Source: Salpingoeca rosetta (lineage: Eukaryota > Protista > Choanoflagellata). From it: a stretch of 64,000 nucleotides of DNA. Below are positions 10,582 through 64,000 of the stretch, piece after piece (the stretch's first letter is position 1; every line of letters begins with the position of its first letter). The notes beneath the pieces are model-generated. The model ran no database searches and was not told the DNA's origin. It was given only the letters and a program-made list of their open reading frames with translations. The stretch is taken from contig JAWQFM010000028.1 of NCBI GenBank assembly GCA_033442325.1, positions 912,558 to 976,557 on the forward strand. The letters are read 5' to 3'. A program made the position numbers and the translations under genes.

Positions 10582-10627
<46 letters not shown>

Positions 10628-19004: not shown

Positions 19005-19036
<32 letters not shown>

Positions 19037-19048
19037 GAGCATGCATGC

Positions 19049-19082
<34 letters not shown>

Positions 19083-20569: not shown

Positions 20570-25358
<4,789 letters not shown>

Positions 25359-25430
25359 CTCCGCTGCTCGGTCATCAGTCAGTTTTTGCGCGCACTGACA
25401 GTGATGATGACAAGCAGCACGAAGCTTAAG

Positions 25431-25527
<97 letters not shown>

Positions 25528-27284: not shown

Positions 27285-27335
<51 letters not shown>

Positions 27336-30300
27336 CGTGGGCACGTATACGCATGTATCATGTATGTGCGTGAGCGCAATGCGACAAGATGAGACAAAAA
27401 GCTGTCGTAGCTCCACCCATACACAGACACGCACGCACACACACACCAACAGACACCCCAACACAGACACCCCAACACACACACACACACACTCACCTGT
27501 GTACGTGGCCGAGGGAGTGAATGAACTTCATGCCATTGGCGACGTCTTGTGCGAGTTGCAGCTTCAGGCCCCACACGGTGGTAGGTCGTGCCGTGGTGTT
27601 GCAAAACGCAGTCACGTGCACAAGATCATCCTCCTCTGCAACAGCAATACCCTCGCCGTGCGACCACACGCTGTTGGATCGATGCCGCGTGTTGCTACCA
27701 CCACCACCATCACCAGCACCACCACCACCACTGTTTCGAGTAGCAGCAGCAGCATCAATCACCACGCGTGTCTCACCGCCTCCAGCACGCTCGCCATCGC
27801 CATCCTCGCGGTTGACGAGCAACGGCACCGTGTCTGAGGTGTTGGGCACGCCTCTGCTGTTGCGCCGTGCACCGCCAAGCACCAGGCTGCCAAGGCGTCC
27901 AGCAACACTCCCACGCCGTTTCACGCTGCCCCCGCGACCACCACCACCACGACGGCCACTGCGTTCTCTCGCCGCCAGCAGTGCGGCCATATCAGCCTGC
28001 AGCAGGTCCTCCAGCGTGCCGCGCGACACAAACTCGAGCACGAGAAAGGGAGCGCCGGAGCCAGGCTTTGTGCCTGCTCCAAAGAAGCGTACGAGATTCG
28101 GGTGCCGCGTGCGCTGCAGGAAGTCCAACTCCTTCTCAAAGTCGGCAGCAAAGTCAGGCGCACCCATGTCACCGCCATCACCACCATTGCCACTGGTGTC
28201 CGTGCATAGCCCGTTGGATGACTTGAGGATCTTCACGGCAACGTCGATGTTGTCCCAGCGGGCCAGATACACGTCTCCAGTGGCCGTGCCCGCGCTGATG
28301 CGTTTCGTGATGTGCAGTTCCTCAAAGCCAATGTACCACGCGCGCTTCAGCTGCATCACCTCCTCGTCCTTTGCCTCCAGCAGCTGTTTCTGCAGGTCGC
28401 CGCGCTGCCGCAGCCGCCGCACGGGCTTGTAGTGGCACTCGTACAGCAGCACCAGGAGCCCGTTGGTGGCAACAATGGCGAGCACAATGCCAACAATCGC
28501 CTCGGTCGTCAGTGCGGGGTTGGGCCGACACGTGCTGCCGGCCAGGTGGTGGCCTTGGGCGCAATCGCAAGCGAAACTGTACACCAGTGCTGACTGCGCC
28601 AGGCTCTGTGCCTCGGTGTTGGTGCGGTTGGTGCTGCGGTGGCTGGTGCCTCCTGCTGGAATGAGCTCGTTCACATTTGTCTCGTCCCACAGCGTGCTGC
28701 GGCCGGCGCGCAGCTCCAGGCTGAGCTGGCAGGAGACGGGCATGTTGTCGGTGATGAAGACGGTGATGACGTTTGCGTTGTCGGCGTTGATGCACGCGCC
28801 CTGGTCCCTGCCCACCTCCACACTCGGCAGCGCAGCGTTGAGGAGGCTCGGGTCTCGCAAGACCGTGTTGTTGGAGATGTCAAACACCTGCGTGTTGTGC
28901 ACACAGCGCTCAAGCATGCTGTCCAGCCGTTGCCGCTGGCTGTCTTGTAGCAGCTCGGGCATGGACGCGAGCTCGCGCATGAAAAGCCGCGAGTGGCCAA
29001 GCGTGTCGCACAACTCCACCAGGTTGTTGAAGTTTGTGCCGCTGATGTCAAGCGTGAACACCTTGGGCACGTCAATCGTGGTCAGCTTCTGGCACTGGGA
29101 CACGTTGAGGATGTGGAGGTCTGACGCAATGTGGACGGTTGTCAGCTCTGGGTTGTGGATGATGTACACGTTCTCAAACACAACGTTGTTGCTGCTGCTG
29201 TCATTGCTGCTGCTGTCATTGCTGCTGCTCTTGCCCTCACCACCACCACCACCACCACCATCTTCACCACCACCACCATCTTCACCACCATCACCATCTT
29301 CACCACCACCACCACCACCAGCGCTGTCATCGTTGTCGCTGTTGTTGCTGTTGGTGGTGCAAAGGTCAACCGTCTTGTGCCGGGTGCCAACCAGCTTGAG
29401 CTCGTTTACAACGCCGGTGCTGCTGCTGTCGAAGAGGTGGCACAGGGAGGGGATGGGCAGGGTCTTGTCGTTGAACATGCTGTGGCCAATGTGCAGCTTC
29501 ATCAGGTGGGCGTCCTTGACGTTGTTGAGCGTGTGCTTCTCAAAGTACATGTTCTCCAGTGTGAGGGCTGTCAGGTTTGGCGCGGACACCTGCTTGTCGA
29601 TGACGAGGCGCGGGGTGTGCTTGGTGTCAGGGCTTGCGCTCAGCTCCAGCTCGCGAAGTGGCAGCAGGCGCACATCGCTGCCGATGGACACCTCGAGAAT
29701 CCGGTGGTTGGCCAGGGACAGCACCTCCAAGTTGGACGGCAGGTCTGCAAAGTTGACGGGGTCTGAGATCTTGTTGTTGGCGAGGCTGAGGGTCTTGAGC
29801 GATTGCACCAGGGCCTGTTTAGCAGAGGTGAGCTGGTTGTTTGCCAGGCTGAGGGTGGTCAGCTGCTGCATGCGTTTGAACGCGTCGGCCTCAATGTGTG
29901 CAATGGCGTTGTTGCTCAGAACCAGCAGCTCCGTGCGGGTGGCGCGGGACAGCGCCTCAGCAGACACTTTGGTGAGGCAATTGTTGGCCAGGTTGAGGTG
30001 CGCAAGGTTGCCCAGCGTGCTCAGGAACGCGTCGGGGAGCTGCGTGATTCCGTTGCCGCTCAGGTCAAGCGTGTGCAGGCTGTTGCTGGCTGGTTGCTCT
30101 GGAGCAAGCAGTAGCGCCTCGCTTTCGCTTGGGGCACCACCGCCATCCACCGCATCCAGGTTTCTGTTGTGGCTGTTGTGGTTGCTGTCATCTTCGGTGC
30201 TGTCTGCCTCCTCAAATTCCTTGAGCGAGAGCGCCTCATTCGAGTGGCGGCAGCCGCCCGCACCAGAGCGGCCTCTGGTTGCACCGTTGATGTTGTTGAG

Positions 30301-32213
30301 AAGAAGGATTTCCAGCGCGTGCATGGAGCGGACTGGCGCTGGGATGGCGCCGAGTGGGTTCCCGCCGAGGTTGAGCATGGTGAGCCCGGTGACCCCAAGC
30401 AGCGCGTTGGACACGCGCGTGAGCAAGTTGTCGGCCAGGTTGAGGGCGGTGAGGGCGGTGAGGTTGCGAAAGTGTGTGTTGGGAATGGCGCTGAGGCTGT
30501 TGCCGCTCAGGTCAAGCGAGGTGAGCTGCGTCAGGTTCTTGGGGAAGGGCTCCGTGATGTTGGTGATGCGGTTGGCGCTGAACGTGAACACCTTGAGGCT
30601 GACCAAGGGCTCCAGGATGGCTGGCGTCAGCTTGGTGATGCGGTTTCCTGCCAAGGAGAGGTACTGCAGGCGCGAAAGCCCCTTGAGCGTGACGTCCCCT
30701 TGTGCAACTTGCTCCAGCCGGTTGTCGGCGAGATCAAGGTGGGTGAGCGCCCCGAGTGGGGCCAGCATGGCGGTATTCAGGCGAGGGAGCCGGTTGCCTG
30801 CGAGAACCAGCGTAGACAGGCGAGTGAGGCCGTTGAAGGTGGCGTTGTCCAGGGTCCTCAGGGCATTGGAGGTGAGATCGAGGCGCTCCAGAGCGGTCAG
30901 GCCATGTAGCACCGTGGAGGAGAGGCCGGTGAGGCCGCAGCGCACCAGCGTAATGGTGCGGAGGGTGCTATTAAACTGGTGCTCTTCCGCGTGCTGATCT
31001 TCGTTTCGCCGCAGGAAGCGGAGGTTGGCGTTGGTGGCGTTCAACACCTCGAGGCTATGAAACTGGCGCAAACTGGCAAAGTGGAAGTCGCTCTTGAGCT
31101 CAAAGTCCCGCATCTCAATGCTTTTGACGGAGCGCCATGTGGTTGCATTGAACATGTGGTGGAGGACGTTTGCCTCCAAGGTCGGCAGCTCCAGGGTGTG
31201 TTCGATGCGCCTGCCCCTGATGATGAGATGGTTGAGAGAGCCGTTGATGTTCAAGGCCTCAAAGGCCTTGGTCACGTCTGCGGTTGGCGGGCTATCCTCG
31301 GGCAGGACGATGGTGAGCGTGGTGACCTTGGGAGGTGTAGCACAAGCCTGATTCAAGACGTCCGTCAGCACGCACTCCGCCACCTGGACGTCACGGGTGT
31401 CCTGGTCATTGGTCCTTGAGAGGGGCGACGCCGACTCGCGTCGAATGCGTTCGTGCTGGGGTTGGTCTTGGTGTGAGGGTAGGTAAGGTTGCCGCGGGTC
31501 TCCAACTGCGTCATCGGGTTCGCGGGCGGTGACGTTGCTTCGCTGAGTGTCGCCGTTTGCGTCAGCGTTGCTGCTGGTTTTGTGAGCGTCGGTTCGGGTA
31601 ACGGCGGTTGCAGTGTCGCGCACGTGATCAGACCTGCTGCGGTGGTTGTCGTGGCCGTTATTGTGGTGGTGGTTGTGGTTATTATCAAGACGATCGTCGT
31701 GGCCCTTGCTGGCAGTTGAAACAAAGACGGCTTCTTCTCGCTGGTGATGTGACTGTGAGGGTTTCGCGGACAGCAGCCCTTCTCCTTCTTCGCCATCGTC
31801 ACACAGGAGCGTGACCGCAATCTCCAAGGAATGGGTGGTGGCTGCAGTAGGGAGGTGCTTGCGCGCCGTCTCCAGCTCTCGCCACGCCTGCTGGCACAAC
31901 TGTGCCTTCAGCGGACAGCCTGTCCACTGCATGGAAAGAGGGGTGTCCGGAGAAGGACCACTGCGCGAAGTGCGCAAGTGTTCTTGTTGTTTTGGTGACT
32001 GGTTTGAGTTTGTGCACTGGGAGATGAGGGCACGGGCGCTTGCCTTAGCTTTGGCGGAGCCCGCGGGTGCCACCCATTGCTGCTGCTGCTGCTGATGTGG
32101 CAGTAGAGACGTTGTCACTGCATCCTGCGCAGCAGATACACCCAAGCAAAAAGAAAGCACAACAACAACGACAACAGGACACGACAACCCATCTCCGGTG
32201 TTGTGGAGTTGCC
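26455..32213 (-). CDS. LRR receptor-like transmembrane kinase (TKL-group Ser/Thr-type); start codon not resolved
   Basis: Hydrophobic signal-like segment VVVVVVLSFCLGVSA; many LxxLxLxxNxL repeats; Cys-rich juxtamembrane CDCAQG...C; TM AIVGIVLAIVATNGLLVLLY; kinase VAVK, HR|DLKSAN, DFG, GTPAYMAPE, DVFSFG, RP. Exons approx 32213-27497, 27265-26882, 26591-26455. Confidence 0.9.
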
Positions 32214-32348
32214 TGCAGGCTCCCTGTGCTTTTTGTGCGCGTCGAAAATTAACTAAAGGTTTCCACCAATCGCCATTTGACGGCAAACGTTTGCACGAGA
32301 GAAGGAAGGAAGATGGCGACGAAGACAGCAGAGGTCAGTGGCGTGGTG

Positions 32349-32413
<65 letters not shown>

Positions 32414-32624
32414 CTTGCGTTGGTTGCCCGAACCGGGATTACTTGAGATGCTTTTGTGCTTTCCCCGGACTTGGACAACGATTGGACCCAGACATGGGGG
32501 GTGGCGGAGTAAACTGTAAGGAAAGAGGTGATCTCTATAAGGGAGCATCGTCAGGGTAGCCTGATATAATGTTTGCGCATGAGTGACAACGTGTCTTCTT
32601 TTTATTCTTTTTTATGTTTTATTT

Positions 32625-32724
32625 NNNNNNNNNNNNNNNNNNNNNNNNNNNNNNNNNNNNNNNNNNNNNNNNNNNNNNNNNNNNNNNNNNNNNNNNNNNN
32701 NNNNNNNNNNNNNNNNNNNNNNNN
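32625..32724. other. Scaffold gap (100 N) with AT-rich, low-quality-looking flanks
   Basis: Run of N lying between the divergent 5' ends of the kinase gene and SF3A1. Confidence 0.99.
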
Positions 32725-32935
32725 TCCCCCTTCTCCGAGCAGATTAGATAAAATAAAAAAAAAAAATAGTTTTTTCTTCATTGTGTTTACTTGTCTAGGG
32801 GTGCGCGTTATTGAAGTGTAGGAGGAGGTATAAGTTCACGCGGATGCGAATATAAATAAAGTACAAAATAACACTCACTTTTCTTGCGCACTTTTTAAGA
32901 TGTTTGACACACGCTCACACACACACACACGCACA

Positions 32936-33026
<91 letters not shown>

Positions 33027-33029
<3 letters not shown>

Positions 33030-35865
33030 CGTTGGCCAATCTGAACATTGCTGAAGAGGAAGAGGTTGAGGTAAGTGCATGAAAGTTGTTATGGCCCAGC
33101 ACGTGTCGGTGTGCATTATTGCGTTCGTGTGTGGTAAAACGTAGGTCTCGTGTCGCTTTCAAGGGACTGACATGCACGTCCGTCTCGCCTGTAGGACACA
33201 ACGGAGGCGGTGGTGAAGGAGCCCAAGCCCTTTGGGTTTGGGGACGAGCCCCCGCCCATGTCGGTGCAAACCCTCGACATGCTCAAGCTCACGGCCCTCT
33301 ACGTCGCAAAGAACGGCAACCAGTTCCTCCAGGAGCTCATGCAGGTGCGTGGTTATGCGTGCGTGTGTGTGTGTGTGTGTGTGCAGATGCATATGCGTGT
33401 GCGGGTGTGTGCGTGTGTTTGTGTGCGTGTGTGCGTGTGTGTTTGTGTGTTTGTGTGTTTGTGTTTGTGTTTGTGTGCGTGTTTGTCCATGCCACGATGG
33501 CACACGAATGCCACAATGGCATGCACGCATGCCCACAGCCGTCATATTCCTCATCTGTCAAACACTCATCTCTGTTCCACCACGTGCACGCAATGCAATA
33601 CACAACACCAGCGGGAGGCACGCAACTACCAGTTTGACTTTTTGCGGCCAAACCACTCCCTCTACAACTACTTCACCAAGCTCACCGACCAGTACAGACA
33701 GGTGCGTGCGCGTGTGCTTGCATGTGTTGTGTGTTTGATGTATACGACGCAGTGGGGGTGATTGTGTGTGTGTGTGTGTATGTGTGTTGTGTGTGTATCC
33801 AAGCAATGTGTGAGCCATCTCTTCCATTTGCCTTTTCGCTTGTTGCAATGCGTTACCCGTTGTCCGTCTCCCCTGTCCTCCACCCACCACCTTCATTGCA
33901 ACCGCACAATTCACGCGCAACACGCACACAATGTCGCGCCTGCTGCTGTCGACAGGTGCTGATGCCGAAACGTGAGATGCTGTCGTCGCTCGCGGACTAT
34001 GCCAACGGGTTCAGCGCGCCCCTCAAGCGCATGCAGCACGTGGCCGCCTGGGGCAAGAAGCTTGCACAGGAGCAACAGCAGCGCGCAGACGAGGAGGAGG
34101 CAGAGCGAAGTGCGTCATGCTGTTGCTGATGGTGGACGGTGGTGGTGGACGTGATGGGCGTCTAGCGTGGTTGCAGCGTTGTTTGTGTTGGCATTCCACC
34201 TGATGTGCTCCCGGCTTGTTTCACAGCACTCACGTTGTATTTTGCACATGGGTTTGCACATGTGTGTGTGTGTGTGCAGTTGCGCGGGCGCAGATTGACT
34301 GGCATGACTTTGTCGTTGTTGCCACCATTGAGTTTGGGCCTCAAGACTCTGGTATGCACGAACATGCACTCGTTCATCTGTCGACTTGGGTTGTGTACTG
34401 TCCATCGTCCGTCTACATTGACCACGGACTGCCACAACCACATCATCATCATGGCCTCATGTTGCCTGATCGTGCCTCTCACCCTCCCCCCCCCCTCTGC
34501 GCGCCCTTCAGACCTCCCGCCGCCCGTGGATCCCGAGGAGCTTGGCGTGCGGGTGATTGAGATGGAGCAGGCCGAGCAGCAGCTGAAGGAGAAGTTGGAG
34601 CAGCAGCCGCGCGCACGCACCGCCCCGCAGCAGGAGGACGCGAAGGAGCACAAGGAGGAGAAGGTACGGGGTATTGGTGATGGACACGCTGGCGGTGCTG
34701 GGGTCGCGTGTAGGTGTGTAGATGTGTGTGGATGTGCGTGTGTGTGTGGATGTGTGGATGTGTGGATTTGTGGATGTATGGATTTGTGGATGTGTGTGTG
34801 TGTGTGGGCGTGTGGATGTGTGTGTGTGTGTAGTTGTGTGCTCTTAACCGGCCAAGCGTTCTTCCTTTCCCATCTCCGTGTTTCACCAATGCACCCTCCT
34901 TCTGCCCCCCCCCTTCAGGCGATGGATGTTGGTGGTGAGGGTGGCGAGGAAGTTGCCATGGAGGTTGAGGAGGAGACAGCGGCGGCAGAGGAGCCAGCAG
35001 CACCTCCGCCAACCACGACAACCGCCGCCGCCGCCGCGGCTGGCGGTGGTGACGAGATCAAGATCAGGTTTGTGCGTACGTGCGTGTGCATGCGTGTGTG
35101 CGTGTGTGTGTGCGTGCGTGTTTGCATGCATGCGTGCGTGCGTGCATGCGTGTGTGCGTGTATGTGTGTGTGTACATGCGTGTGTGCGGGCGTGCGTGTT
35201 TGTGTATGTGTGTGCGCGTGTTTCTGTATGTGTGTGTATCTTATTGTGCCACGACGTTTGTTTCCTGCGTCTCGTTCTCCTCCTCACCACAACCACCACC
35301 ATCACGACCACTCGTGCTGCCATTGCATGCATCAGGGAGTATGATCCAAAGAGCAAGACGCGGCCCGCGGCAGCAGCGGCCGCCGGCAAGGAGGAGATGC
35401 TTGTCTCTCCGCTCACCGGTCAGTTCCATACAAATCAACATCACCTCTTTGTTTGGTGGTCATCGTGTGTGTGTGTGTGTGTGTGTGCGTGTGTGTGTGT
35501 GTGCGTGCAGAGCCACGCCGCAAAAAGCTTGACCCTTCGTTGCAAGCGTTAATCATCGCCGTCTCGGATATGTCTTTACGTCGGGGGACTCTGGGTCATA
35601 ATTTAGGTGTCGCTATCGTGCACATTTATTAAGTTGCGCACGGGCGGGCCCGGGGCGGCCCCCTCCCGTGGAAATCTCTAGAGATCCCTGGAAATCCATA
35701 GGAGGTTCAGCTTATGCCTATCATCTAGTAGCGTTAGGGTATGTTCCAGAAGGACTTGGGGATATGAGAGCCGTACAGGTGGCATGAGAGCGGAGGTTAT
35801 CCATACCATTTCCAGATGTTAAGGAAATTATCCTACACGTACATGTGCATGTGTGTGTGTGTGTG

Positions 35866-35928
<63 letters not shown>

Positions 35929-38355
35929 TCTTGTGTGAATTAGAGTGACCCCCCTCCTTCTTTTCCCCCGACATGCACGGGTTGCTTTCCATTCGGCAGC
36001 CAGTTTGCTGCTGCTAACACGTTACGATGATCATGACCACCACCGCCATCGCGACTGTAGGCGAGCTCATTCCCGCGTCGAAGATGCAGGAGCACATGCG
36101 CATCAGTCTCCTCGATCCAAAGTGGCGCGAGGAGAAGGAGAGGTACGACGCTCGCATTCGTCCTCGTGATTGTACACGTTTCAAAGATGGTTCGCAGTAC
36201 ACCACTGCGCCACTGCACCACACAGCCTTCCTGTTGGCACAGATCACCGCTCCTCGTTGACCTGTGTGACGCGTGCTTGCCAACACACTCCCTCACACTC
36301 CAACACACTCCCTCGCATTCACTCACACTCCCCACGTGTGTGCTGTGCGCCCCTTGCAGGCAGGAGCGTGAGGCTGCGAAGCGGAAGGAGGATTGGATCC
36401 GCAGCGGGCAGCAGACGATGGACCATCTAAAGGACATTGCTGCCCGCCGTACAGATATCTTCGGCTCTGGTGACATCGAAACAGAGATTGGCGAGAAGGT
36501 ACACATGCTACACGCGCGCAACACATTCGCATCCAGCGTGTTGTTGTTGGTTTCTGGCAGACCTGTGGATGCCGTAATGGGTGTGTGTCCTTTGCTTGTG
36601 CCTGTGTCTTTCCACTCTCTGTTTTGGCCTTCTTAGTCCCCCCTTGTGTGTGCTGGTGGTTGCATTTCCGGCCCTTGTGCACCCACCGTCTTCTTCGTTT
36701 GTTCGCTGACCCCACTTGTGTGGCGTACAGATTGGCGCGGAGGGAGCAGCAGAGACAGGCCCGCAGCAGAAGCCAGCGACCACCACAACCACCACCACCA
36801 CAACCACCACGACCAAAGCAACAACGTACCGTACACCGTTTGCACACGTTGATGGCACATTATTGCATGTTGCAGCTGCTCATGTGCGCGCTTTGGCTGT
36901 CGCTCACAGACTCACTGCATGTGCCACTCCTGTCATTGCACACATCATTGTACAACCGTCTGTCTGTTGTGTCTGTTGTGTGTGTTGTGTGGTGGTGTGT
37001 TGTGTGATGGTGTGTGTGTGTGTGTGCGTGTGCGTGCGTGTGTTGTGCTGCTGTCTGTGCTGCCTTGCAGCAACACCAGGCCTGCGCCTCCGCCCATCTC
37101 AAAGCCGCCAGCATCCACTGCCCCGCCCGCAGCCAAGTGAGCCCGAGTAGTCGTCGTCGTTGGTTGCTTGAGTCGTTGTGGTTGTAGTTGTTGTGGTTGT
37201 CGGTGTTGTTGCTGGTGTTGTTGTGGTTGTGGTTGTGGTTGTAGTTGTAGTTGTCGTTTGCGGCATGTCATGTCGCGTGCTAGCAACGAAACGTTCCATG
37301 ATCACTCTGACATGCCCAACCACCACCACCACCACCAGGCCTGCTGTCCCCGCCACGTCCGCTCCCTCGACCAGCACCGCTGCTGCGCCCCCGGCATCGC
37401 GGCGGCCACCGCCTCCGTCCACCACCGCTGCACCGCCGCCGCCGCGACCAGGGATGCCGCCAATGGGGGGTATGCCCCCTCGGCCGCGCATGCCCTTCCC
37501 CATGGGCCCGCCGCGTACCCGGCCCATGTACCCGCACCACCCGATGGGTCGCCCCGGGTTCCGCCCGCCCCCGCCGTTTGGGTTCCGCCCGCCCCCGCCA
37601 ATGGGGCCAGGCATGCACAGGCCTCCCATGCAGCAGCAGCCGCAGCACCAGCTCGTGCAGCAGGCACAGCAGCTGGCAGCAGCCCAGGTGTGGCCAATGA
37701 CCTTTCTGTGTGTATGTGTATGTGTGTGTATGTGTATGCGTGTGTGTGTGTGCGCGCGTGTGTGTGTTTTGCCCGTTTGGGTGATTCATTGAGCTCTTTC
37801 CATATCCTTGCACGCGCCTGCATATTGCTTCCGCGTACCTCATGCCTCGTGTGCTGTGCCTCATGTGTGGTGTGCAGGGTGGGCCGCCCACGAAGCGCAG
37901 CAAGACTGACGAGATGGTCAGCGCCCTCAAGCCCGAAGACCAGTTCCTCAAGGACCACTCGGTACACTTTCCTGTCATCCATACAATATGTTTTGAGTGT
38001 GTCGTGTGCGTGTGTTGTGTGTTGTGTGTGTGTTGTGTGTGTTGTGTGTGTGTTGTGTGTTGTGTGTTGTGTGTGTTGTGTGTGTTGTGTGTTGTGTGTG
38101 TCGTGCATGCGCTCTTGCAACTTCTGTGTTTGTTGTGCAAATGGTGCATGCCGAACACCTGGTCTCAGCCGCATGTCAGCTTGCGTTTCAGTTGCTGCTC
38201 ACACACCATGTACTCCATGCCCACGTTGTGTTTTCATCCCCACCTGTGTGCGCAGGGCGATGTGACGGTGAATGCGACGGTTGGTGTGGATGACGAGGCC
38301 TTCAGCCTCACCTCCGGCACCCAAGTCCACGTCACCCTCCCTTACACCGCCAAGG

Positions 38356-46520: not shown

Positions 46521-50895
<4,375 letters not shown>

Positions 50896-51390: not shown

Positions 51391-53313
51391 TTACTTTGCT
51401 TCTTCCATGGCGGTGGTGATGGCATGGGACCAGTCCTCCAGTGTCAGCGAACTCTTCCCCTCCACGCATTGCATAATGTAGATGCGACCCGGCACTGAAA
51501 CGCGCAGGTCCCGCCCCTCCACATCAACAGCAGTGATGTGTTCAAGGGGAATGTGCCCGCGTGGAATGTCGCCATCGCGGCTCGACTTGCAGTACGTCAG
51601 CGCCGTGTCCGTCAGCCTGAAGAAGCGAGTGCGAAACCCTTTGTGCCGCCCACCCCTCTTCTTCAGCCATCCCCCCATACGCACCACGCCGCCAAACTTG
51701 CCAATGCCGACCCCCAGCCCGTCGCCGCCCTGCTCTGCCGCAATCCGGGCTGCGCACCCGCGAGCGATGCCCAAGTTGCGCTCTGTTGCCACCGTGAACG
51801 GGTGTTCGGGTCCCAGCGTGCCCATGAACACTGCCACCGCCTCCTCCACCATGCCGACGCCTCGTGCGCCGTGGCCCTGCTTCACCAGCGTCGTGCCCAA
51901 GTTCGCCAGCGCCAGCCCAATGTCCGGGTGCGCGTCGCCGAGCACAGCGCGCTTGATGGCGAGATCGCGCTCGTAATACTCAACGGCGCGGGCAAAGTCG
52001 CCCCTCTCATCGTATGCGTTGCCGAGGTTTCCCACCGCCATGGCCGTGCTCGGGTGCTCCTCCCCAACCGTCACCAGGAAGATGGCCAGCGCCTTGTTGA
52101 AGCACTCGATCGCATCGGCGTACTGCTTGCCCTCCAGCAGCACCGTTCCCAGGCTGTTGTACGACTGCGCCACCAGCGGGTGCTCCTCCCCCAGCGCCCG
52201 GCAGCCCGCCCGAATCGCCCGCTCATACAGCGCCACCGCCTTGCTCGTGTCGCCGTTGTTGTCGTGCGCAAACCCGAGCGTCTGCAGTGCACACGCCGTG
52301 TCGCGGTGGTCCTCGCCCAGTGTGCCCACCAAGATGTCCACGGCCCGCTGGCAGCACGTGACGCCTGTTTCCGCGTCCCCGGCCTCCGCGGCTGCGCTGC
52401 CGATGTTGGCGTACGCCTTGGCCGTCAGCGGATGCTCGTCGCCGACGGTGGCGCGGAAGATGGCCAGCGCCTTTGCGCCGCACTCCGCAGCCTGCTCGTA
52501 GTCGCCGTTGCTGCGGTGCGCCTCGCTCAGGTTCACGTATGTCACGCCCGTGTCCTGGCTGTGCTCGTGGCCATGGGCCAGCGCCACGCCGAGGTCCTTC
52601 ATGTGCAGCTCAATGGCCCGCTCGTGCTCTCCAAACTGATCCAGCACCGCCCCCACCTGTCCGCACAGCAGGCCGTACAGCTGCGTCTCCGTCTCGCCCG
52701 ACTGCTCAAGCTCGTCGACGAAGGACAGCGCTGCCTGCAAGCACCACTGTCGCATCTGGTTCTTGACGGCCTCGTCGAGCGCAGGAAAGCCGACGCTGGC
52801 GCGGATGGCCCCGAAGATCATGTCCCTGTCCTCGGCTTTCCAGGCCTCTGCTTTCTCTGCCTGCACGTCCACCAAGGCATCGGTGACCACGTCAAAGTTC
52901 TGTGCCAGCGCCTGTCGGAGCTGGCCACGCTCCCCCTTTGGCAGCCTGATCTCCAGCTCCACCTCGGGCTGGCTGATGCTGCAGAAGATTTCCCACAGGC
53001 ACCACGCGCGCGTCAGCGGCACGGGGTTGTTCCAAGGCGTCAGCACCAGCAGCACTTTGCCGATGGATGCGATCGAATCCTTGAACGTCGTGCTCCACCT
53101 GCAGCGTTGAGTTGTGGGGTGTTGGGGGGGGGGGGGTGTCGAGGAGGGGTGTGAGATGGTGTGAGTGAGTGGAGTAATTAAGAGTGTGGTACAGTGACAT
53201 GTGACGTTGTATGCGGGGGCCGATCGCCAAATCCCATATGCATACGCACACAGAGGGGGAGAGAGGGAGAGGGAGGGGGAGAGAGAGAGTGTGTGTGTGT
53301 GTTTGTGTGTGTT

Positions 53314-53397
<84 letters not shown>

Positions 53398-53878
53398 CCG
53401 TTGTGCTGGACCATGTGCGTTGCTCTGACCCCAACAGCCATCGTTATCGCTCAATCAACCACACACACATTCACACACACACACACAACACTGACCACTC
53501 TTGGGGGAGGTTGGCGGTGACGTTTTGATGCTGGTTGTTCATGAAGAGATCGAACCAGAAGTGGGTCTTGCGGCCATGCTTGCTCTCCTCCTCCTCGGCA
53601 AACTCCAGCAGCGTGGTGAGGACATCCACGATCTTGTAGCGCCACGCATGCGACACAAACACGGTTGCAGGGCGCACGTCATCACTGCCGTTTTGATCCC
53701 GCATCACGTCAATGTACGCGCACTGCTTCTCCTCTGTTTGTGGCACAACAAACTCCACGCACGCCTCCTGCGTTGTCATGTCCTTGTGCTTCTCTGGAAA
53801 CGCCGTCTCAAGGCCCTGCAGGAAGGACCGGATCGCTCCCGCAGACACCCCATCCGTGTTGATGCCGGGTGGAGGCAT
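51391..53878 (-). CDS. HET/TIR-like N-terminal domain + kinesin-light-chain-type TPR array + C-terminal PH domain, 2 exons (53878-53496, 53098-51391)
   Basis: FVSHAWRY...[11 protein letters not shown]...[17 protein letters not shown]; about seven 42-aa TPRs ([15 protein letters not shown]); PH domain [20 protein letters not shown]...PRGHIPL...WSHAI. Confidence 0.85.
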
Positions 53879-57298: not shown

Positions 57299-60200
57299 CT
57301 AGAGTTGCGCTGTGAGTGCTGCTTTGTTCACCTTGACAAACACTTTCGCAAATGGCAAGACCTGCGCCTCTTGTGAGACTACATACTCCTCAAAGTCAAA
57401 GGTGCCAGGTGTGGGCGCTCTGGTGGATTGGTAGCCCATGCGCTTTGTGACTTGGATGTAGTGGGTGTTGCAGCCTTTATGCAGCGGTTTGCCCCAGAAC
57501 TTCTTGCACTTGTTTTCCCCAGACGATGGGTAGTCCTTACTCCTGGTGATCGGGTATGCGAGGCCGACGCTGACAGCGCACAGGAGCATCACGTGCTCCC
57601 CGTCTGCGTTGGGCGGGCGCCAATTCCCAGTCAGCAGGGTGGTTGCGTAGCCAGCCGCGCAATTGGCTTGCGGCGTGAGGTAGATGCCAGCACCAAAGAA
57701 GCCAGGGTCGTTCGGGTTACTGAGGTTGGCGGTACCCGCGGCGGTGATGTCGTCGGCGACAGCCTCGTCACAGCCGTGGAAACCAATCAGCACGTTGACG
57801 TGCTTCACGCTGTCGGGTGTTTCTGCAAACTGCGTCTTGAGCCGATTGAGCATGCCTTGTTTCTCCGGATCGCCAGCCCCAAAGTCCTTGTTGAAGGGCT
57901 TTTGACCACCACGACGAGTCGCCGATTTCTTCATTTCGGTGTGAAAGGCATCGAGCATTGTGGTGGACTTGGTCATCTCTACGCGCGACAGGGTGAGGCC
58001 CGGCGCCATCTGACTCTCTATCCACCGGTAGAGGTCTGTGTCTGGTGGCAGCGGTGCTGAATACACGCCATGTTCACTCGGTCCGCTCCACGGAAGCTGC
58101 TCATCAAAGGTGTCATCAAGCCGCCACGCGCGGTGGTGCCACTCGTGATCGCGCAATTGCCAGGAGGGCATGACGGGTGATTGTTGCGTGGGTGCTTGCA
58201 GCAGCAGATCGCCAACGCGATCGGACACTGGGTTCTGGCCTTCCCTGTGGTGCGTGGACGTGACGAGCTCGTCTGTGCCCTTGTCCGTCAGGGCCTCGAG
58301 CTTGTGCGCGGCTGGGTGGTTTTCGTGGCGCTTCAGGTGTTTCGTGCTGAGGACGAGGTGGACATGGTCAATCCCCCTTGCTTCCTCTTGCAGCAAACAC
58401 AGCACCTACCATCAGTACCGCAAGCGAGCAGAGGATGAGCAGAGGATGGGATGAGGGTGAAAGATCAAAGCTGGCCATTCGCTGGTAAGCGATGGGCACA
58501 ACAACGCAAGCTCACACACACAACATACATGCCCACAAGCACTCACATTCACTCACAATCGCTCACAAACTGACTTTTGTCATGAATGGCAGGGCCTTGT
58601 GCTCTGCGCCGCCGGGTGCCCTCACCCACACATCCACTTCTCGATCGCCCCGCAGCAGGCCAAGGCACTGCACACCATCACGCTTGCAGCAGAAGGCATT
58701 CTTCCACACCCTAAGGTTTGTGCCAAACGAATTGTGCAACAAAGTCTGCACGTGCGGGAAGAAGCCCGGTGGTAACGCAAGTGCCTTGCTCTCGACCACC
58801 AGCAGTCGTCCACTGTAGACGGGCCAGAAGCCCGTTCGAGGCCAGGCATCGTCAAGATCGACCTCCTTCTCAACATGGCTCGGCAGCATGAATTGCCGCT
58901 GGCCATCGTCCGAAGGCGGCAGCTCGAAGCAGAGGAGCGTGTGCTGCAGGACGTTGATGACGAGGTCTGCGCTAGCAATGCCTCGGAATGCGGTCTCCAG
59001 GTCCGTGAAGGTCACGACGCCTTTCGTGGTAATGGAGCCTTGTTGCACGCCATCTGGCGTCAGCGCTCTCCCCAACACGTCATGAAGCAGCCAGTTCGGG
59101 TCGACGAAGATGAAATCCGCCAAGGATGGGGTGTTGGAATACCACAGAAGATCACCGCGCGAGTGGAGGTACCTGTGGACAGAAATTCAGAAGCAGGGGA
59201 GCAGGTGACGGGTGTGAGCGCGCAACGCACGATTGAGGGTTGAAGGGGTGGGGCATTTTAGTGAACACCTCAACCGCCACGGCGCGTGCACACACACACA
59301 CACGCACACACAGACACACACACACAGACACACACACACACACACACAGACACACACACACACACGCGCGCGCGCGCGCGCGCGCGCGCGCTCGCCCGTT
59401 TTGCCTGCCTGAGTGTTTGGTGAAAGGGGTCCTCGTGGATCATCGAGATGAGGTCGATGCCATTCCCGCTGCCTCGAACAAAGTCCAATAAATCATCCAC
59501 GCGCCACATCGCCTTGCTCTTCGCTGCTTTCTTTAAGGCCCCTGCCACTTCATTCACCACCTGTGGCACCAGCATTTTGAGTCCTTTCAGCCACCGCCAA
59601 TGGTCAACAAGCTGTGATCGGAGCACGTCAAAACCAGCCTCGCCACCCTGATGACAGTTGAGCGGGGTAAGAGTAGCTTGGATATCGATGATGCTGCCGA
59701 AGGTGTGCTGTAGGTGCGCGACCATCGCTGCGCCCCACGGCGGCTGCCCATTCGCATCCACAAGTCTTTTCTTGCGAGCAAGGTCTCTCTTGGTGCCCAC
59801 AATGAGCACTCGCGGCTTCACCTCTTCCATGGCATCTTCTGTCTCGCCGCCGCCCGCCGTTGCTGAAGCGGCTGCCATGCCTTGCTGGAGACGTGTGCAG
59901 ATGAACTGCAGCCAGTAGTTGGCGCGCTCCTTCACATGTTCTTTCGGCTCAGACAGGTCGACACAGACGACAAAGGCAGCGAAGCGATCCGACATCATCA
60001 GCGTGTGGATGACGTGATATGCGAGCTGCCCGCCAAAATCATACACGCGAAGAGACGCAGCGTTGTCACCGTCGTTGCCTTGGCTTGTGGTGTCTTTCAA
60101 CTTCATTTCACAGACTCGAATGCCGGGCGTGCGCTCGTTTCGGCGGTCTGGGTCATTTGCTGGTTGGAAGATGGTGCGTGTGAAGCGGCGAAACAGGCTG

Positions 60201-63200
60201 CCTGGCAGGGACTTGATCATGGTGCTTTTGCCAATGCCGTAATCGCCGCATACAAACACCTTTGCTGTCTCAAGAGGGACGGAGCCGGTTTCAAGCAGCT
60301 TCAGAAGATCGAGCTGCTCTTGATAGGCGGCTTTGGCGGAAGAGTCGAACCTGTCCTCTGTTTCGAAATCACTGAAGAGTGCAGAGTGGACGGTGAATGA
60401 GGGGAGGAAAGAAGATGGAGTGGGACGGGTGTTTAAAGCAAGAACAAGACTGGCACACCATTGCTGTACGAACTCACGCGAAGACAACGTCGAAGTGTGG
60501 CTGCTTGGTGCGGAGAGTGGCCAGTGCACGGGCGACGGCGGTGGAGGATTTGAGCTTGTCCTCGTACAGCCTGTGATGCCGTGAAGAGGGAATGTGAGAT
60601 GAAAGAACTTGAACTGAGGTTGAGTGCGGGGGGGGGGCGTGTGCGTGGAGCGAGGTGGCAAGCACACGTGACCTCACAGAATCTTGGCCTTGGCGTCGAT
60701 GCCTTGCAGCTGCTTCAGCACATTCACCATGCCAGACTCCGTGATACCATTGTGGTAAATGCTGTTGGATGAGATTAAGATCAGGTGAGTTGGCAACAGG
60801 AACGAAGCGGGTCACTGTTGCAGGCAGGAATATGCCCTGCTTGCTTGCAACATGTTCGCGCGGCGGCAGTGACAGCGCAACAGCGACGCAGCCCATTTCC
60901 ATCCATACATGTACATGTGTGCGTGTACACACTCACCCGAGCCATGTGAGGGTCGTGTTGTGCTTCAGCATCTCCGCCAACGCCACGGCGCCCTCAGGGC
61001 CGATGGAGTTCTCACTCAGGCTGTCAAGACGGTATGGTGGATGCCACACAGGGGGATGATGCCACATGGGTGAGAAAGAGTGAGTGAGTGAGTGATGATG
61101 ATTGTTGTAGGTGTCAACACAGTCATCAACCACACATGTGCACGTGATAAGGTGCAGCGGCAGTGACGCAGCATACATGTGTGTGCATGTGTGCGTGTGC
61201 GTGTCCACACTCACCCGAGCCATGTGAGGGTCGTGTTGTGCTTCAGCATCTCCGCCAACGCCACGGCGCCCTGGTCGCCGATGGAGTTCTCACTCAGGCT
61301 GTCAAGATGATATGATGCCACGCAGGGGGATGATGCCACATGGATGAGGAAGAGTGAGTGCGTGAGCGTGATGATTGTTGTGGGTGGCAACACAGTCGTT
61401 GAACCCCACCCCACCCCACCACACATGTGCACGTGATAAGGTGCAACAGGCAGTGATGCAGCATACATGTGTGTGTGTGTGTGTGTGTGTGCATGTGTGC
61501 GTGTCCACACTCACTGGAGTTCCTTGAGGGTCGTGTTGTGCTTCAACATCTCCGCCAACGCCACAGCACCCTCATCGCCGATGGAGTTGCCATCCAGGCT
61601 GTCAAGATGATGTGATGCCACACAGAGGGATGATGCCACATGGGTGAGGAAGAGCGTGATGATTGATGTGGGTGGCAACACAGTCATCAATCCACACATG
61701 GGCACGTGATAAAGGTGCAGCGGCAGTGACGCAGCATACATGTACATGTGTGCGTGTACACACTCACTCGAGCAATGTCATGGTCGTGTTGTGCTTCAGC
61801 ATCTCCGCCAACGCCACGGCGCCCTCAGGGCCGATGGAGTTCTCACTCAGGCTGTCAAGACGGTATGGTGGATGCCACACAGGGGGATGATGCCACATGG
61901 GTGAGAAAGAGTGAGTGAGTGAGTGATGATGATTGTTGTAGGTGTCAACACAGTCATCAACCACACATGTGCACGTGATAAGGTGCAGCGGCAGTGACGC
62001 AGCATACATGTGTGTGCATGTGTGCGTGTGCGTGTCCACACTCACCCGAGCCATGTGAGGGTCGTGTTGTGCTTCAACATCTCCGCCAACGCCACGGCGC
62101 CCTTATCGCCGATGGAGTTGTTGCTCAGGCTGTCAAGACGGTATGGTGCCACACAGGGCGATGATGCCACATGGATGAAGAAGAGTGAGTGAGTGCGTGA
62201 TGATGATTGTTGTGCGTGGCAACACAGTCATCAATCCACACATGTGCACGTAATAAGGTGCAACGGCAGTGACGCAGCATACATGTGCATGTGTGCGTGT
62301 GCGTGTCCACACTCACCCGAGCCATGTGAGGGTCGTGTTTTGCTTCAGCATCTCCGCCAACGCCACAGCGCCCTCAGGGCCGATGTCATTGCCAAACAGG
62401 CTGTCAAGTTGGTGTATTGTCACGCAGGGCGATGATGCCACTTGGGTGAGGAAGAGTGAGTGCGTGCGTGAGTGATGATTGCTGTGGGTGGCAACACAGT
62501 CGTTGAACCCCACCCCACCAACCACACATGTGCACATGATAAGGTGCAACAGGCAGTGACGCAGCATACATGTGTGCATGTGTGCGTGTACACACTCACC
62601 CGAGCCATGTGAGGGTCGTGTTGTGCTTCAGCATCTCCGCCAACGCCACAGCACCCTCATCGCCGATGGAGTTGTTGTTCAGGCTGTCAAGACGGTATGG
62701 TGGATGCCACGCGCGATGATGCCACATGGATGAGGAAGAGTGAGTGAGTGAGTGATGACTGCCGCGGGTGGGTGGCAACACAGTCATCAATCCACACATG
62801 TGCACGTAATAAGGTGCAACAGGCAGTGACGCAGCATACATGTACATGTGTGCGTGTACACACTCACTTGAGCCATGTCATGGTCGTGTTGTGCTTCAGC
62901 ATCTCCGCCAACGCCACAGCGCCCTCATCGCCGATGTTGTTGTCCCACAGGCTGTGCAGGCACACAAGGAAACGCAGGGAGCGAAGGTGAACACAGGTCC
63001 AAACATGCGCAAGCAGGGGAGAAAAGGGGTGCAACGTGCAACACCGCCATCCCAGTCAACCATGCATGTCACACGATGCAGATTCATCATCACCACGCAC
63101 AGGAGCGTTTCGAGGCAGGTGTTGTCCTTGAGCGCCTCGGCCACCGCACGCGCCTCAATGACGCCGAGGCCATAACCACCCAAGCTGTAATTTCAAATGG

Positions 63201-63616
63201 TGTGTGTCATGCAATGGGCAAGAAGACTGAGGATGAAGAGAGCAAAAACATGAGGGTGCCAGTCACAACCTGCCACAAACACACATCGTGTGTCTAGGCG
63301 GTGCGAGGGGACAGGACACGTACACGTGAACACCCAACAGCAAGCCACACCAAGCTCATTGCAACACAAGGACAAGCCAAGCAGCAGAGAGAGAGGGGAG
63401 AATAAGCACAAGCACAACCACAAGAAGTGTCCTTGTGTCCAACACATGCATGCATGTTCCAACACGTCGTTTTGGTTGCTTTTGCACTCACCCCACATTG
63501 TCCCCACACGTGTTGTTGGCGATGGCCCTGATCTCTTCCTTCACCCCATCCTTCAGCTTCGTCTGCGCCAGCAACGCCTCCACCTCCTCCCTCGCTCTCT
63601 TCTCTCCGCCGGACAT
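57299..63616 (-). CDS. ROCO protein: LRR (RI-like)-Roc GTPase-COR-PARP-type ADP-ribosyltransferase, 15 exons
   Basis: Exon 1 63616-63492; ten 84-nt LRR exons; a 93-nt exon; Roc exon 60371-59409 (GDYGIGKST, ERTPGI, DFGGQ, TKRD); COR exon 59172-58575 (YLHSRGDLLWY...FVDPNWL, LPPGFFP); last exon 58405-57299 with FHGC, FFGAGIYLT, AAGY, EEYVV. Confidence 0.9.
60937..62951 (-). repeat. Tandem array of eight near-identical 84-nt LRR exons separated by homologous introns (unit about 250-300 bp)
   Basis: Exons at 60937-61020, 61215-61298, 61515-61598, 61768-61851, 62046-62129, 62317-62400, 62600-62683, 62868-62951. Consensus LxxNSIGDEGAVALAEMLKHNTTLTWL; introns gtgagt...cttgacag. Confidence 0.95.
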
Positions 63617-64000
63617 GGCGACGGCGCGTCGTCTTTTCTCCTTGTGGCTTGTTGTGACGTGTTCGTGAGTGACTGGAAGAAGACGACGACAAAATGGACG
63701 ACGACAACTCAACGCGCTGCTTTGTTTGTTTCCTTTGTTTTGTGTGTGTGTGTTTTGCGACTCAGCCATCTGGACGATTCGCAAAACCTTACAGAGGTTA
63801 TCCGCACAGCAGCGCTTCCGTGGAAGATGTTCGTCAACAATCTCATTCGAGCCCTCGTTGTCGACAGAACACAACAAACAAACAGGATGAAGTGCCTCCA
63901 GCCAACCAGCAGCACGCAACTCGCTTTGTCGCGCCGAAAGGAACAACAGCCGCTCCTCCCAGCATCTTTTGGCTTGCCTGGGTCGGACAATACACCAATG

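What the first reader, a model, noticed from the sequence alone, without database searches (positions are those of the whole stretch)
60678..63184. One-LRR-per-exon cassette array with variation focused at the splice-junction beta-strand
Seen: ten consecutive exons of exactly 84 nt (28 aa), all phase 2/phase 2, so skipping, duplicating or swapping any of them keeps the frame. In the eight core copies the helix GAVALAEMLK(H/Q)NTT is essentially invariant. The residues flanking the intron vary: exon starts LWDNN, LNNNS, LFGND, LSNNS, LSENS, LDGNS, LSENS, LSENS; exon ends TWL, TLL, KEL. The split codon of the xLxL strand gives N, G, G, G, D, H, G, G. Known: the LxxLxLxxN strand forms the concave ligand-binding face of LRRs, and exon-shuffled LRR-ROCO genes have been reported in the brown alga Ectocarpus. 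Inference: each binding strand is assembled from two neighbouring exons, so recombination or alternative splicing creates new surfaces combinatorially.
Basis: partly seen in the sequence, partly recalled or inferred. Interest (0 to 1): 0.85.

Follow-up and report, generated by a model that had tools for sequence, protein, structure and literature searches.

The report
Choanoflagellate LRR exon-cassette receptor array
The sensor end of a Salpingoeca rosetta ROCO-PARP gene is a row of nearly identical 84-base exons, one leucine-rich repeat each, whose ligand-facing codons vary far more than the introns. The design is real and under diversifying selection, but it is already known from brown algae, ciliates and animal NLRC3 genes.

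Summary
On the minus strand there are ten consecutive 84-nt exons with GT..AG introns, all phase 2/2. Eight are near-identical cassettes duplicated together with their introns. RNA reads cover the exons and not the introns.

The gene is Salpingoeca rosetta PTSG_08728, with the architecture LRR-Roc-COR-PARP.

Across 63 cassettes from 11 paralogous arrays, variation sits at repeat positions 2, 3, 25, 26 and the split codon 28. Nucleotide diversity there is 0.53-0.64, against 0.157 in introns. pN(x)/pS(rest) is 4.0 [3.5-4.7]. An AlphaFold model places the beta strand on positions 26-27-28-1-2, centred on the intron.

Paralogs carry 2-9 cassettes and lie mostly near contig ends. Two four-gamete quartets show reassortment across the intron.

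So germline exon shuffling with diversifying selection is supported. Alternative splicing and somatic recombination are not shown.

The kind is known: brown-alga ROCOs (72 bp) and Tetrahymena (90 bp). An anchovy NLRC3 gene has 13 exons of 84 nt, with the same phase and the same place in the motif.

The scan had already reported this family on other pieces of this genome (s1-435316, s1-434355). I class it as a new member of a known kind.

The parts
63492..63616 (-). Exon 1 (125 nt): start codon and N-terminal helical cap (MSGGEKRAREEVEALL...), ending in phase 2
   Evidence: donor gtgagt. It matches residues 1-42 of the annotated protein P0133. RNA depth is present in this bin.
63101..63184 (-). 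84-nt exon: first, divergent LRR (LGGYGLGVIEARAVAEALKDNTCLETL). It is a position-specific cap repeat, not a cassette.
   Evidence: The RNA joint 62951/63101 confirms its downstream intron. The same exon heads the paralog arrays.
62868..62951 (-). Core cassette 1 (LWDNN...MTWL, split codon N)
   Evidence: RNA joint 62951/63101
62600..62683 (-). Core cassette 2 (LNNNS...LTWL, split codon G)
62317..62400 (-). Core cassette 3 (LFGND...LTWL, split codon G); the last cassette kept in the public gene model
62046..62129 (-). Core cassette 4 (LSNNS...LTWL, G); absent from the public gene model
61768..61851 (-). Core cassette 5 (LSENS...MTLL, D); absent from the public gene model but spliced to cassette 6 in RNA
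   Evidence: Joint 61598/61768 is seen in three RNA runs.
61515..61598 (-). Core cassette 6 (LDGNS...LKEL, H); absent from the public gene model but spliced to cassette 5 in RNA
61215..61298 (-). Core cassette 7 (LSENS...LTWL, G)
60937..61020 (-). Core cassette 8 (LSENS...LTWL, G)
60678..60761 (-). 84-nt exon: terminal cap LRR (IYHNGITESGMVNVLKQLQGIDAKAKI), conserved at the end of the PARP-type paralog arrays
   Evidence: RNA joint 60569/60677 (cut +1)
60478..60570 (-). Linker exon (93 nt, phase 2 in and out) between the LRR array and the Roc exon
   Evidence: Read from the sequence; the RNA joint; matches P0133
57299..60371 (-). Rest of the gene: Roc GTPase, COR and a C-terminal PARP catalytic domain (several exons)
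   Evidence: Pfam Roc 4.7e-9 and PARP 2.5e-7; precomputed COR-A on the annotated product
60951..61245 (-). One copy of a 295-bp perfect duplicate (the other is 61782-62076, offset 831 = three units). It covers the last 31 nt of one cassette, the whole intron and the first 70 nt of the next cassette.
   Evidence: introns 5 and 8 are 100% identical
61782..62076 (-). Second copy of the 295-bp perfect duplicate

Best explanation
This is the ligand-sensing N-terminal domain of a cytosolic ROCO protein of the choanoflagellate Salpingoeca rosetta (PTSG_08728: LRR-Roc-COR-PARP).

It consists of ribonuclease-inhibitor-type 28-residue leucine-rich repeats, one per 84-nt phase-2 exon. The eight core exons are young copies of one exon-plus-intron module of about 275 bp. 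They multiplied and were exchanged by unequal crossing-over and gene conversion, both within the gene and among some two dozen paralogous arrays that lie mostly near chromosome ends.

The helix-coding core and the introns stay alike. Selection keeps the solvent-exposed strand residues different (repeat positions 25, 26, 28, 2, 3, plus loop positions 5 and 8). Because the intron lies in the middle of the strand codons, every new neighbourhood of cassettes gives a new strand, so germline shuffling makes new concave surfaces.

Shown here: the anatomy, transcription and splicing, the family, the excess diversity at the strand positions, the variable cassette number and the reassortment.

Inferred: that the proteins are pathogen- or prey-sensing receptors that signal through Roc-COR to an NAD-using effector (PARP, or TIR in sister genes). 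All cassettes are probably spliced in constitutively. Diversification is evolutionary, not somatic.
For: - Anatomy: ten 84-nt phase-2 exons; tandem unit of 271 bp.
- RNA: exon-only depth, strandedness and three clean splice joints, one of them between two cassettes.
- Domains: Pfam Roc and PARP; COR-A on the annotated product.
- Organism and gene name.
- Fold: RI-type LRR by sequence against solved structures (RI-like protein 1e-34, NOD2 3e-32, ribonuclease inhibitor 5e-19). The AlphaFold model has pLDDT 84.8 with strands at repeat positions 26-27-28-1-2.
- Family: at least 119 matches of the exon-intron unit on more than 20 contigs, mostly within 82 kb of a contig start on the + strand or at high coordinates on the - strand.
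- Position of three genes: 22 kb, 55 kb and 18 kb from scaffold ends, with the 5' end outward.
- Cassette number: 63 cassettes from 11 arrays, 2-9 per gene.
- Entropy: about 3 bits at positions 2, 3, 26, 28 and about 0 at most others.
- Diversity: pi 0.525 at x codons and 0.64 at the split codon, against 0.157 in introns and 0.087 in other codons.
- Substitution rates: dN(x) 0.98 against dS(rest) 0.147; pN(x)/pS(rest) 4.0, bootstrap 3.5-4.7.
- Exchange between genes: the intron tree mixes cassettes of different genes.
- Reassortment: two four-gamete quartets across the intron and none inside an exon.
- Recent exchange: the 295-bp perfect copy.
- Age of the design: a diverged paralog (PTSG_13043) keeps the same 84-nt exon structure with unlike repeats, so the exon design is older than the cassette burst.
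Against: - No function has been tested. The immune-receptor role rests on analogy (LRR sensor plus NTPase switch plus PARP/TIR effector, diversifying selection, subtelomeric family).
- The neutral yardsticks (introns, other synonymous sites) may themselves be lowered by gene conversion. The excess at x codons may therefore reflect selection that preserves old diversity rather than faster substitution.
- Inside the x codons dN/dS is only 1.37 and is saturated.
- Only 11 of roughly 25-36 arrays could be fetched.
- Contig lengths of the window's assembly are not known, so 'subtelomeric' is shown for three genes and for arrays near contig starts. It is inferred for the rest.
- Constitutive inclusion is not proven for all cassettes, because short reads cannot be placed uniquely.
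Confidence: 0.75

Rival explanations
1. Alternative splicing engine. Because every cassette is symmetric (phase 2/2) and has the same splice sites, the cell skips or chooses cassettes and so makes many receptor isoforms from one gene, as reported for brown-alga ROCO genes.
For: - All ten exons keep the frame when skipped.
- Splice sites of the cassettes are nearly identical (ttgacag|C ... G|gtgagtgt).
- The public gene model joins cassette 3 directly to the terminal exon.
- Brown-alga ROCOs have annotated splice variants with different LRR content (PMC11378527).
Against: - None of the 15 best-supported RNA joints is a clean cassette skip.
- The odd joints carry extra letters and match paralogs.
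- The exon 5-6 cassette joint that the public model omits is seen in three runs.
- The sister gene PTSG_09285 is annotated with all eight cassettes.
- Collapsed transcript assemblies of near-identical repeats would produce a false skip.
- 20 further joints were not displayed, so rare skipping is not excluded.
Confidence: 0.15
2. Programmed or frequent mitotic recombination. Subtelomeric arrays act as donor libraries, and cassettes are copied into expressed genes within clonal lineages, in the manner of lamprey VLR assembly or antigenic variation.
For: - The family lies near chromosome ends in a common orientation.
- There is a perfect 295-bp conversion tract.
- Cassettes of different genes are intermingled in the intron tree.
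- The same idea was raised for brown algae (PMC3341825).
Against: - The gene is a complete, spliceable open reading frame in germline order. VLR cassettes, in contrast, lack splice sites and flank an incomplete gene.
- The gene sequence is base-for-base identical in a second public record of the species (6318/6318).
- Cassette divergence (K about 0.15-0.18) fits evolutionary time, not ongoing turnover.
- No recombinant reads could be assigned.
Confidence: 0.04
3. No adaptive meaning. The exon ends vary only because they are unconstrained or mutation-prone, and the array is a neutral by-product of tandem duplication, or an assembly artefact or pseudogene.
For: - Tandem repeats are prone to mis-assembly.
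- The public model leaves five cassettes out.
- Saturated x codons give a local dN/dS of only 1.37.
Against: - Diversity at x codons is 3.3-fold that of the adjoining introns, while the interleaved L1, N4 and L27 are invariant in 63 of 63 cassettes. Relaxed constraint cannot exceed the neutral rate.
- The variable sites are exactly the canonical exposed strand positions.
- All cassettes keep the frame and their splice sites.
- RNA shows spliced, stranded transcripts.
- The array is identical in two records.
Confidence: 0.05

Closest known systems
Exon-shuffled LRR-ROCO genes of brown algae (Ectocarpus, Saccharina; Zambounis et al. 2012, PMC3341825; Teng et al. 2024, PMC11378527)
   Same: - LRR-Roc-COR architecture.
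- One LRR per exon of fixed length, all phase 2.
- Variable repeat number and shuffling between genes.
- Positive selection on the concave face.
- Proposed role as an immune receptor.
   Different: - 72-bp exons encoding 24-residue repeats, against 84-bp exons encoding 28-residue RI-type repeats here.
- In the algal exons the selected sites (14, 16, 18, 19 of the exon peptide) lie inside one exon. Here the strand is split by the intron.
- The C-terminal effector here is PARP (or TIR in sister genes).
- The host is a choanoflagellate, far from stramenopiles, so the origin is most likely independent.
Animal NLRC3/NOD-type LRR domains (tested here on Engraulis encrasicolus NLRC3, P0153/L036)
   Same: - RI-type 28-residue repeats.
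- 13 consecutive exons of exactly 84 nt, with the same phase (one base completes a codon).
- The same place of the intron in the motif: each exon starts at L of LxxNx(I/L)G and ends at LxxL plus two bases.
- Rabbit NOD2 is among the best solved-structure matches.
   Different: - In the fish gene the repeats are old and unlike each other, and the introns are long and unrelated.
- The switch domain is NACHT, not Roc-COR.
- There is no sign there of young co-duplicated exon-intron cassettes.
Tetrahymena 90-bp-exon LRR genes (Xiong et al. 2019, PMC6564038)
   Same: - Tandem arrays of LRR exons of one exact length with an extreme phase-2 bias.
- Exon-intron units duplicated together.
- The youngest genes are concentrated in subtelomeric (and pericentromeric) regions.
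- Unequal crossing-over is proposed as the mechanism.
   Different: - 90-bp exons.
- Thousands of genes.
- Association with a LINE-like element.
- No Roc-COR-PARP context is described.
Lamprey and hagfish variable lymphocyte receptors
   Same: LRR cassettes are combined to give varied concave surfaces.
   Different: - VLRs are assembled somatically by gene-conversion-like copying from non-spliced flanking cassettes into an incomplete gene.
- Here the cassettes are ordinary spliced exons of a complete germline gene. No somatic change was seen.

Membership tests
Ribonuclease-inhibitor-type (RI/NLRC3-like) leucine-rich repeats | 28-29-residue period with the consensus LxxLxLxxNx(I/L)GxxGaxxLaxxLxxNxx | tested here: met
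   The consensus of 63 cassettes fits, with L1, N4, G10, A11, L14, L18, N21 and L27 invariant. Pfam LRR_6 is the only hit of a single exon, but below its cut-off (19 against 23.4 bits). Solved-structure matches are an RI-like protein (1e-34), NOD2 (3e-32) and RI (5e-19).
Ribonuclease-inhibitor-type (RI/NLRC3-like) leucine-rich repeats | Alternating short beta strand and alpha helix in each repeat (solenoid) | tested here: met
   The AlphaFold2 model of P0133:1-215 has pLDDT 84.8 and pTM 0.82. One 4-5-residue strand and one 10-12-residue helix occur every 28 residues.
ROCO proteins | Roc (Ras of complex proteins) GTPase domain | tested here: met
   Pfam PF08477, E 4.7e-9, 36.9 bits against a cut-off of 27.
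ROCO proteins | COR domain directly after Roc | tested here: met
   Precomputed Pfam COR-A (PF16095) on the annotated 1101-residue product. My own scan of the single open reading frame 58566-59123 gave no hit, so the C-terminal half of COR is not covered by a Pfam match.
Exon-shuffled LRR-ROCO genes as defined in brown algae | Each LRR on its own exon of constant length with symmetric phase 2 | tested here: met
Exon-shuffled LRR-ROCO genes as defined in brown algae | 72-bp exon encoding a 24-residue repeat with the variable strand inside the exon | tested here: not met
   Exons here are 84 bp, repeats are 28 residues, and the strand is split by the intron. The algal values come from PMC11378527. 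It works like the algal system but is not the same exon family.
Exon-shuffled LRR-ROCO genes as defined in brown algae | Diversifying selection at concave-face residues and variable cassette number among paralogs | tested here: met
Exon-shuffled LRR-ROCO genes as defined in brown algae | Splice variants with different cassette content | tested here: inconclusive
   Short reads are polluted by paralogs. No clean skip appears among the 15 joints displayed, and 20 further joints were not displayed.
VLR-like somatic LRR assembly | Incomplete germline gene completed by copying non-exonic cassettes | tested here: not met
   The open reading frame is complete with canonical splice sites at every cassette. 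Spliced RNA follows germline order. The DNA is identical in two records.

The most novel reading that the evidence does not exclude
S. rosetta might diversify these receptors within clonal lineages. The route could be regulated cassette skipping, or frequent mitotic gene conversion among the subtelomeric arrays. Since every cassette junction makes a chimeric binding strand, a single cell line could then explore many recognition surfaces. That would be a repertoire-generating system in the closest living relatives of animals, built on the same exon module as animal NLRC3.
Probability: 0.07. Interest if true: 0.85.

Novelty: new member of a known kind. Interest (0 to 1): 0.5.

Why it matters
Choanoflagellates are the sister group of animals, and little is known about how they recognise bacteria, viruses or prey.

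This gene belongs to a family of LRR-Roc-COR genes ending in PARP or TIR domains. The family lies near chromosome ends and is fast-diversifying, with a textbook signature of selection on the ligand face. That makes it a concrete candidate for an innate recognition system in this lineage.

The exon module (84 nt, phase 2, intron inside the strand) is the same as in a vertebrate NLRC3 gene. This raises the testable question of whether the module predates animals.

Practically, the public gene model for PTSG_08728 lacks five expressed cassette exons and should be corrected.

I found no description of this family in choanoflagellates in the searchable literature. The principle itself is established elsewhere.

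Tried and rejected
The family analysis therefore rests on 11 arrays, and contig lengths stay unknown.

2. The telomere-repeat scan showed that TTAGGG tracts exist. Its listing stopped at contig 23, so the end of contig 28 could not be checked.

3. RNA reads at 97% likeness were meant to detect exon skipping. Reads of 101 nt from paralogs map in part and give many false 'goes back' and 'skips' joints with foreign letters. Only three joints are clean, so the test is inconclusive for skipping.

4. The joint 61020/61517 looked like a skip of cassette 7. It carries two foreign letters and short sides of 29 nt or less, so I assign it to a paralog.

5. I first took the shorter public protein (three cassettes) as a possible collapsed assembly or copy-number difference. 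I rejected this because the gene DNA is identical over 6318 bases. The difference is in the gene model only.

6. A Mantel test for linkage of the variable ends gave weak values (r 0.08 within an exon, -0.03 across the intron). It shows near-independence but says little on mechanism.

7. Literature searches for '84 bp' NLR exons and for intron phase in NLR genes gave nothing usable. I replaced them with a direct test on an anchovy NLRC3 locus.

8. Look-ups of P0152 and P0169 found no record.
Full report
**What is there.**
The feature lies on the minus strand. Reading the reverse complement of 60350-63700 gives a start exon (63616-63492, 125 nt, ending in phase 2). It is followed by ten exons of exactly 84 nt. 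Each is preceded by AG and followed by GT. Each begins with one base that completes a codon and ends with two bases of the next.

The first and last of the ten exons are divergent cap repeats. The middle eight are 80-95% identical to each other.

The repeat unit is not the exon alone but exon plus intron. Tandem Repeats Finder reports a 271-bp unit, 5.4 copies, score 1773. Introns 2-8 are 91-100% identical over aligned columns.

A 93-nt linker exon (60570-60478) follows the array. After it come exons that carry a Roc GTPase domain (Pfam 4.7e-9) and a C-terminal PARP catalytic domain (2.5e-7). COR-A is recorded on the annotated product.

**Whose gene it is.**
An exact-protein look-up of the neighbouring single-exon gene placed the region on GL832979.1 of assembly GCA_000188695.1. 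A protein search named the products as Salpingoeca rosetta proteins.

The gene is PTSG_08728 (P0133, 1101 residues). Its DNA in that record is identical to the window over all 6318 bases. The public protein nevertheless contains only three cassettes. The model jumps from cassette 3 to the terminal cap exon and leaves out 62129-60937, which holds five cassettes.

**Expression.**
Three stranded RNA-seq runs of the species give depth in the exon bins and none or almost none in the intron bins, all on one strand. Clean canonical joints are seen at 62951/63101, 61598/61768 and 60569/60677.

The second of these joins two of the cassettes that the public model omits. The model is therefore incomplete, and the product is about 1241 residues.

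The remaining joints are unusable. Reads of 101 nt from paralogs match parts of the array and create joints with foreign letters between the sides. None of the 15 displayed joints is a clean cassette skip, and 20 further joints were not displayed. Alternative splicing is therefore neither shown nor excluded.

**The family.**
The 362-nt stretch 'cassette-intron-cassette' finds at least 119 matches on more than 20 contigs of the 55.4-Mb genome. Many matches are 82-92% identical across the intron as well.

Most arrays lie within 82 kb of a contig start on the + strand, or at the highest coordinates of a contig on the - strand. Their 5' ends therefore point outward. A few more divergent arrays are exceptions.

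In the public assembly, PTSG_08728 starts 21.6 kb from the end of a 983-kb scaffold. PTSG_13043 starts 55 kb from the end of a 740-kb scaffold, and PTSG_09285 starts 18 kb from the end of a 916-kb scaffold.

From the 30 loci I could fetch I merged 11 arrays and extracted 63 core cassettes. Genes carry 2 to 9 of them.

Two kinds of genes share the same cassettes. One kind is the LRR-Roc-COR-PARP genes, whose arrays end in the IxxNGITE cap exon. The other is larger genes with ankyrin repeats, Roc-COR and TIR domains, whose arrays continue with LxxNSITPVGG exons. A predicted TNFR-Cys protein also carries related exons.

A diverged paralog (PTSG_13043) has seven 84-nt phase-2 LRR exons whose sequences are unlike each other. 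The exon design is therefore older than the burst of near-identical cassettes.

**Where the variation is.**
Among the 63 cassettes, residues L1, N4, G10, A11, L14, L18, N21 and L27 never vary, and the helix GAVALAEMLKHNTT is almost fixed.

- Entropy is 3.4, 2.8, 3.1 and 2.9 bits at positions 2, 3, 26 and the split codon 28.
- It is 1.2-1.5 bits at positions 5, 8 and 25.
- It is close to zero at most other positions.

In the motif LxxLxLxxN these are the x positions.

An AlphaFold2 model of residues 1-215 of the annotated protein has pLDDT 84.8 and pTM 0.82. It puts each beta strand on repeat positions 26-27-28-1-2, so the intron lies in the central codon of the strand. By the established geometry of LRR solenoids, the strands line the concave face. 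Positions 26, 28 and 2 alternate with the buried leucines.

The domain is of the ribonuclease-inhibitor type. Its best solved relatives are RI-like proteins, NOD2, LRRC34, ribonuclease inhibitor and NLRPs.

**Is the variation more than neutral?**
I chose the classes beforehand from the motif: x codons 2, 3, 25, 26 against the other 23 complete codons.

- Nucleotide diversity is 0.525 at the x codons and 0.64 at the two exon-final bases of the split codon.
- It is 0.157 over 182 well-occupied intron columns and 0.087 at the other codons, with 0.098 at their third positions.
- Pooled Nei-Gojobori values are dN 0.98 at the x codons against dS 0.147 at the other codons. The helix has dN/dS 0.17.
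- The uncorrected ratio pN(x)/pS(rest) is 4.0, with a bootstrap interval of 3.5-4.7.

A caveat applies. Gene conversion probably homogenises introns and helix cores, which lowers the yardstick. Inside the x codons dN/dS is only 1.37, with saturation. The safe conclusion is selection that creates or preserves diversity at the exposed strand residues. Relaxed constraint alone cannot exceed the intron rate while the interleaved leucines and the asparagine stay invariant.

**Is there shuffling?**
- A tree of the introns mixes cassettes of different genes and contigs. Only the last intron of an array forms a position-specific group.
- Among 49 adjacent cassette pairs there are 45 different strand combinations.
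- With haplotypes at least 3 nt apart on each side, two four-gamete quartets exist between the 3' end of one exon and the 5' start of the next. No such quartet exists between the two ends of one exon. This small but direct signal suggests that exons are the linked units and that breakpoints fall in the introns.
- Mantel correlations are near zero both ways.
- The youngest event in this gene is a perfect 295-bp copy (60951-61245 = 61782-62076, three units apart). It has its ends in the helix-coding cores and carries a complete strand with its intron.

So both kinds of exchange occur, and not every event makes a new strand.

**Comparison with what is known.**
- Brown-alga ROCO genes have one LRR per 72-bp phase-2 exon, shuffling, selection on the concave face and annotated splice variants (PMC3341825, PMC11378527).
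[quoted passage not shown] The youngest lie in subtelomeric and pericentromeric regions, and unequal crossing-over is proposed as the cause (PMC6564038).
- I tested the animal side directly. In the genomic locus of an anchovy NLRC3 protein that the search had returned, 13 consecutive LRR exons are exactly 84 nt long. They have the same phase. They start at the L of LxxNx(I/L)G and end at LxxL plus two bases, exactly as here.

The 'strand assembled from two exons' design is therefore the ordinary exon design of NLRC3-type repeats, not a peculiarity of this gene.

What is particular here is the combination of four things:
- young cassettes with co-duplicated introns;
- a family near chromosome ends;
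- Roc-COR with PARP or TIR ends;
- the host, a choanoflagellate.

I found no published description for this host. Two earlier reports of this scan describe the same family on other pieces of this genome, and my results agree with them.

**Verdict.**
It is unproven for alternative splicing and unsupported for any somatic process.

This is a new member of a known kind, of moderate interest. The interest lies mainly in the origin of animal innate immunity and in correcting the gene model.

Noticed in passing
window 60937-62129 (minus strand): The public gene model of PTSG_08728 (1101 residues) omits five cassette exons. These exons are intact in the DNA, and at least two of them are joined to each other in RNA reads (joint 61598/61768). 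The product should be about 1241 residues.
   Followed up: yes
L036 (Engraulis encrasicolus NLRC3 locus), exons at 17975-36160: Thirteen consecutive LRR exons of exactly 84 nt have the same phase and the same intron place in the repeat motif as the choanoflagellate cassettes. The exon module may predate animals or may be convergent.
   Followed up: partly
L035 (PTSG_13176) 8790-10975; P0152, P0163: Related 84-nt LRR exons occur in genes with other architectures. One group has ankyrin, Roc-COR and TIR domains (about 1420 residues, some ten genes). Another gene has TNFR-type cysteine-rich repeats upstream of the LRRs. The cassette module has been joined to different effector ends.
   Followed up: partly
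window 57299-58405 (minus strand): The C-terminal PARP catalytic domain appears, by eye, to keep the His (GFHGC), Tyr (GIYLT) and Glu (FEEYVV) motif residues. An active ADP-ribosyltransferase effector is therefore plausible. The same gene was noted separately in the scan as ROCO-PARP.
   Followed up: partly
window 51391-53878 (minus strand): The neighbouring gene has an unassigned N-terminal part (no Pfam hit), a long TPR_12/TPR_10 array and a C-terminal PH domain. It is another repeat-sensor-like protein next to the ROCO gene.
   Followed up: partly
window 59289-59395 and many other introns (e.g. 50050-50360, 53200-53400): Long (CA)n/(TG)n tracts and a (CG)n tract lie inside introns and between genes. 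They produce many spurious Thr-His or Cys-Val open reading frames in six-frame listings.
   Followed up: no
cassette nucleotides 37-66 (e.g. window 61233-61262): The helix-coding core of the cassettes has nucleotide diversity 0.006-0.044, several-fold below that of the introns (0.157). Several of its codons have no synonymous differences at all. This could reflect homogenisation by conversion or a constraint at the nucleotide level. The ends of the 295-bp perfect copy fall in these cores.
   Followed up: partly
G000 contig 13, 1709588-1716488 (loci L009, L012, L014, L016, L020, L025): One paralogous array is interrupted by gaps of 1576 and 1007 nt between cassettes. It repeats the cassette LQYNS...MTLL twice. 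This may be an insertion or a partial duplication of the array.
   Followed up: no
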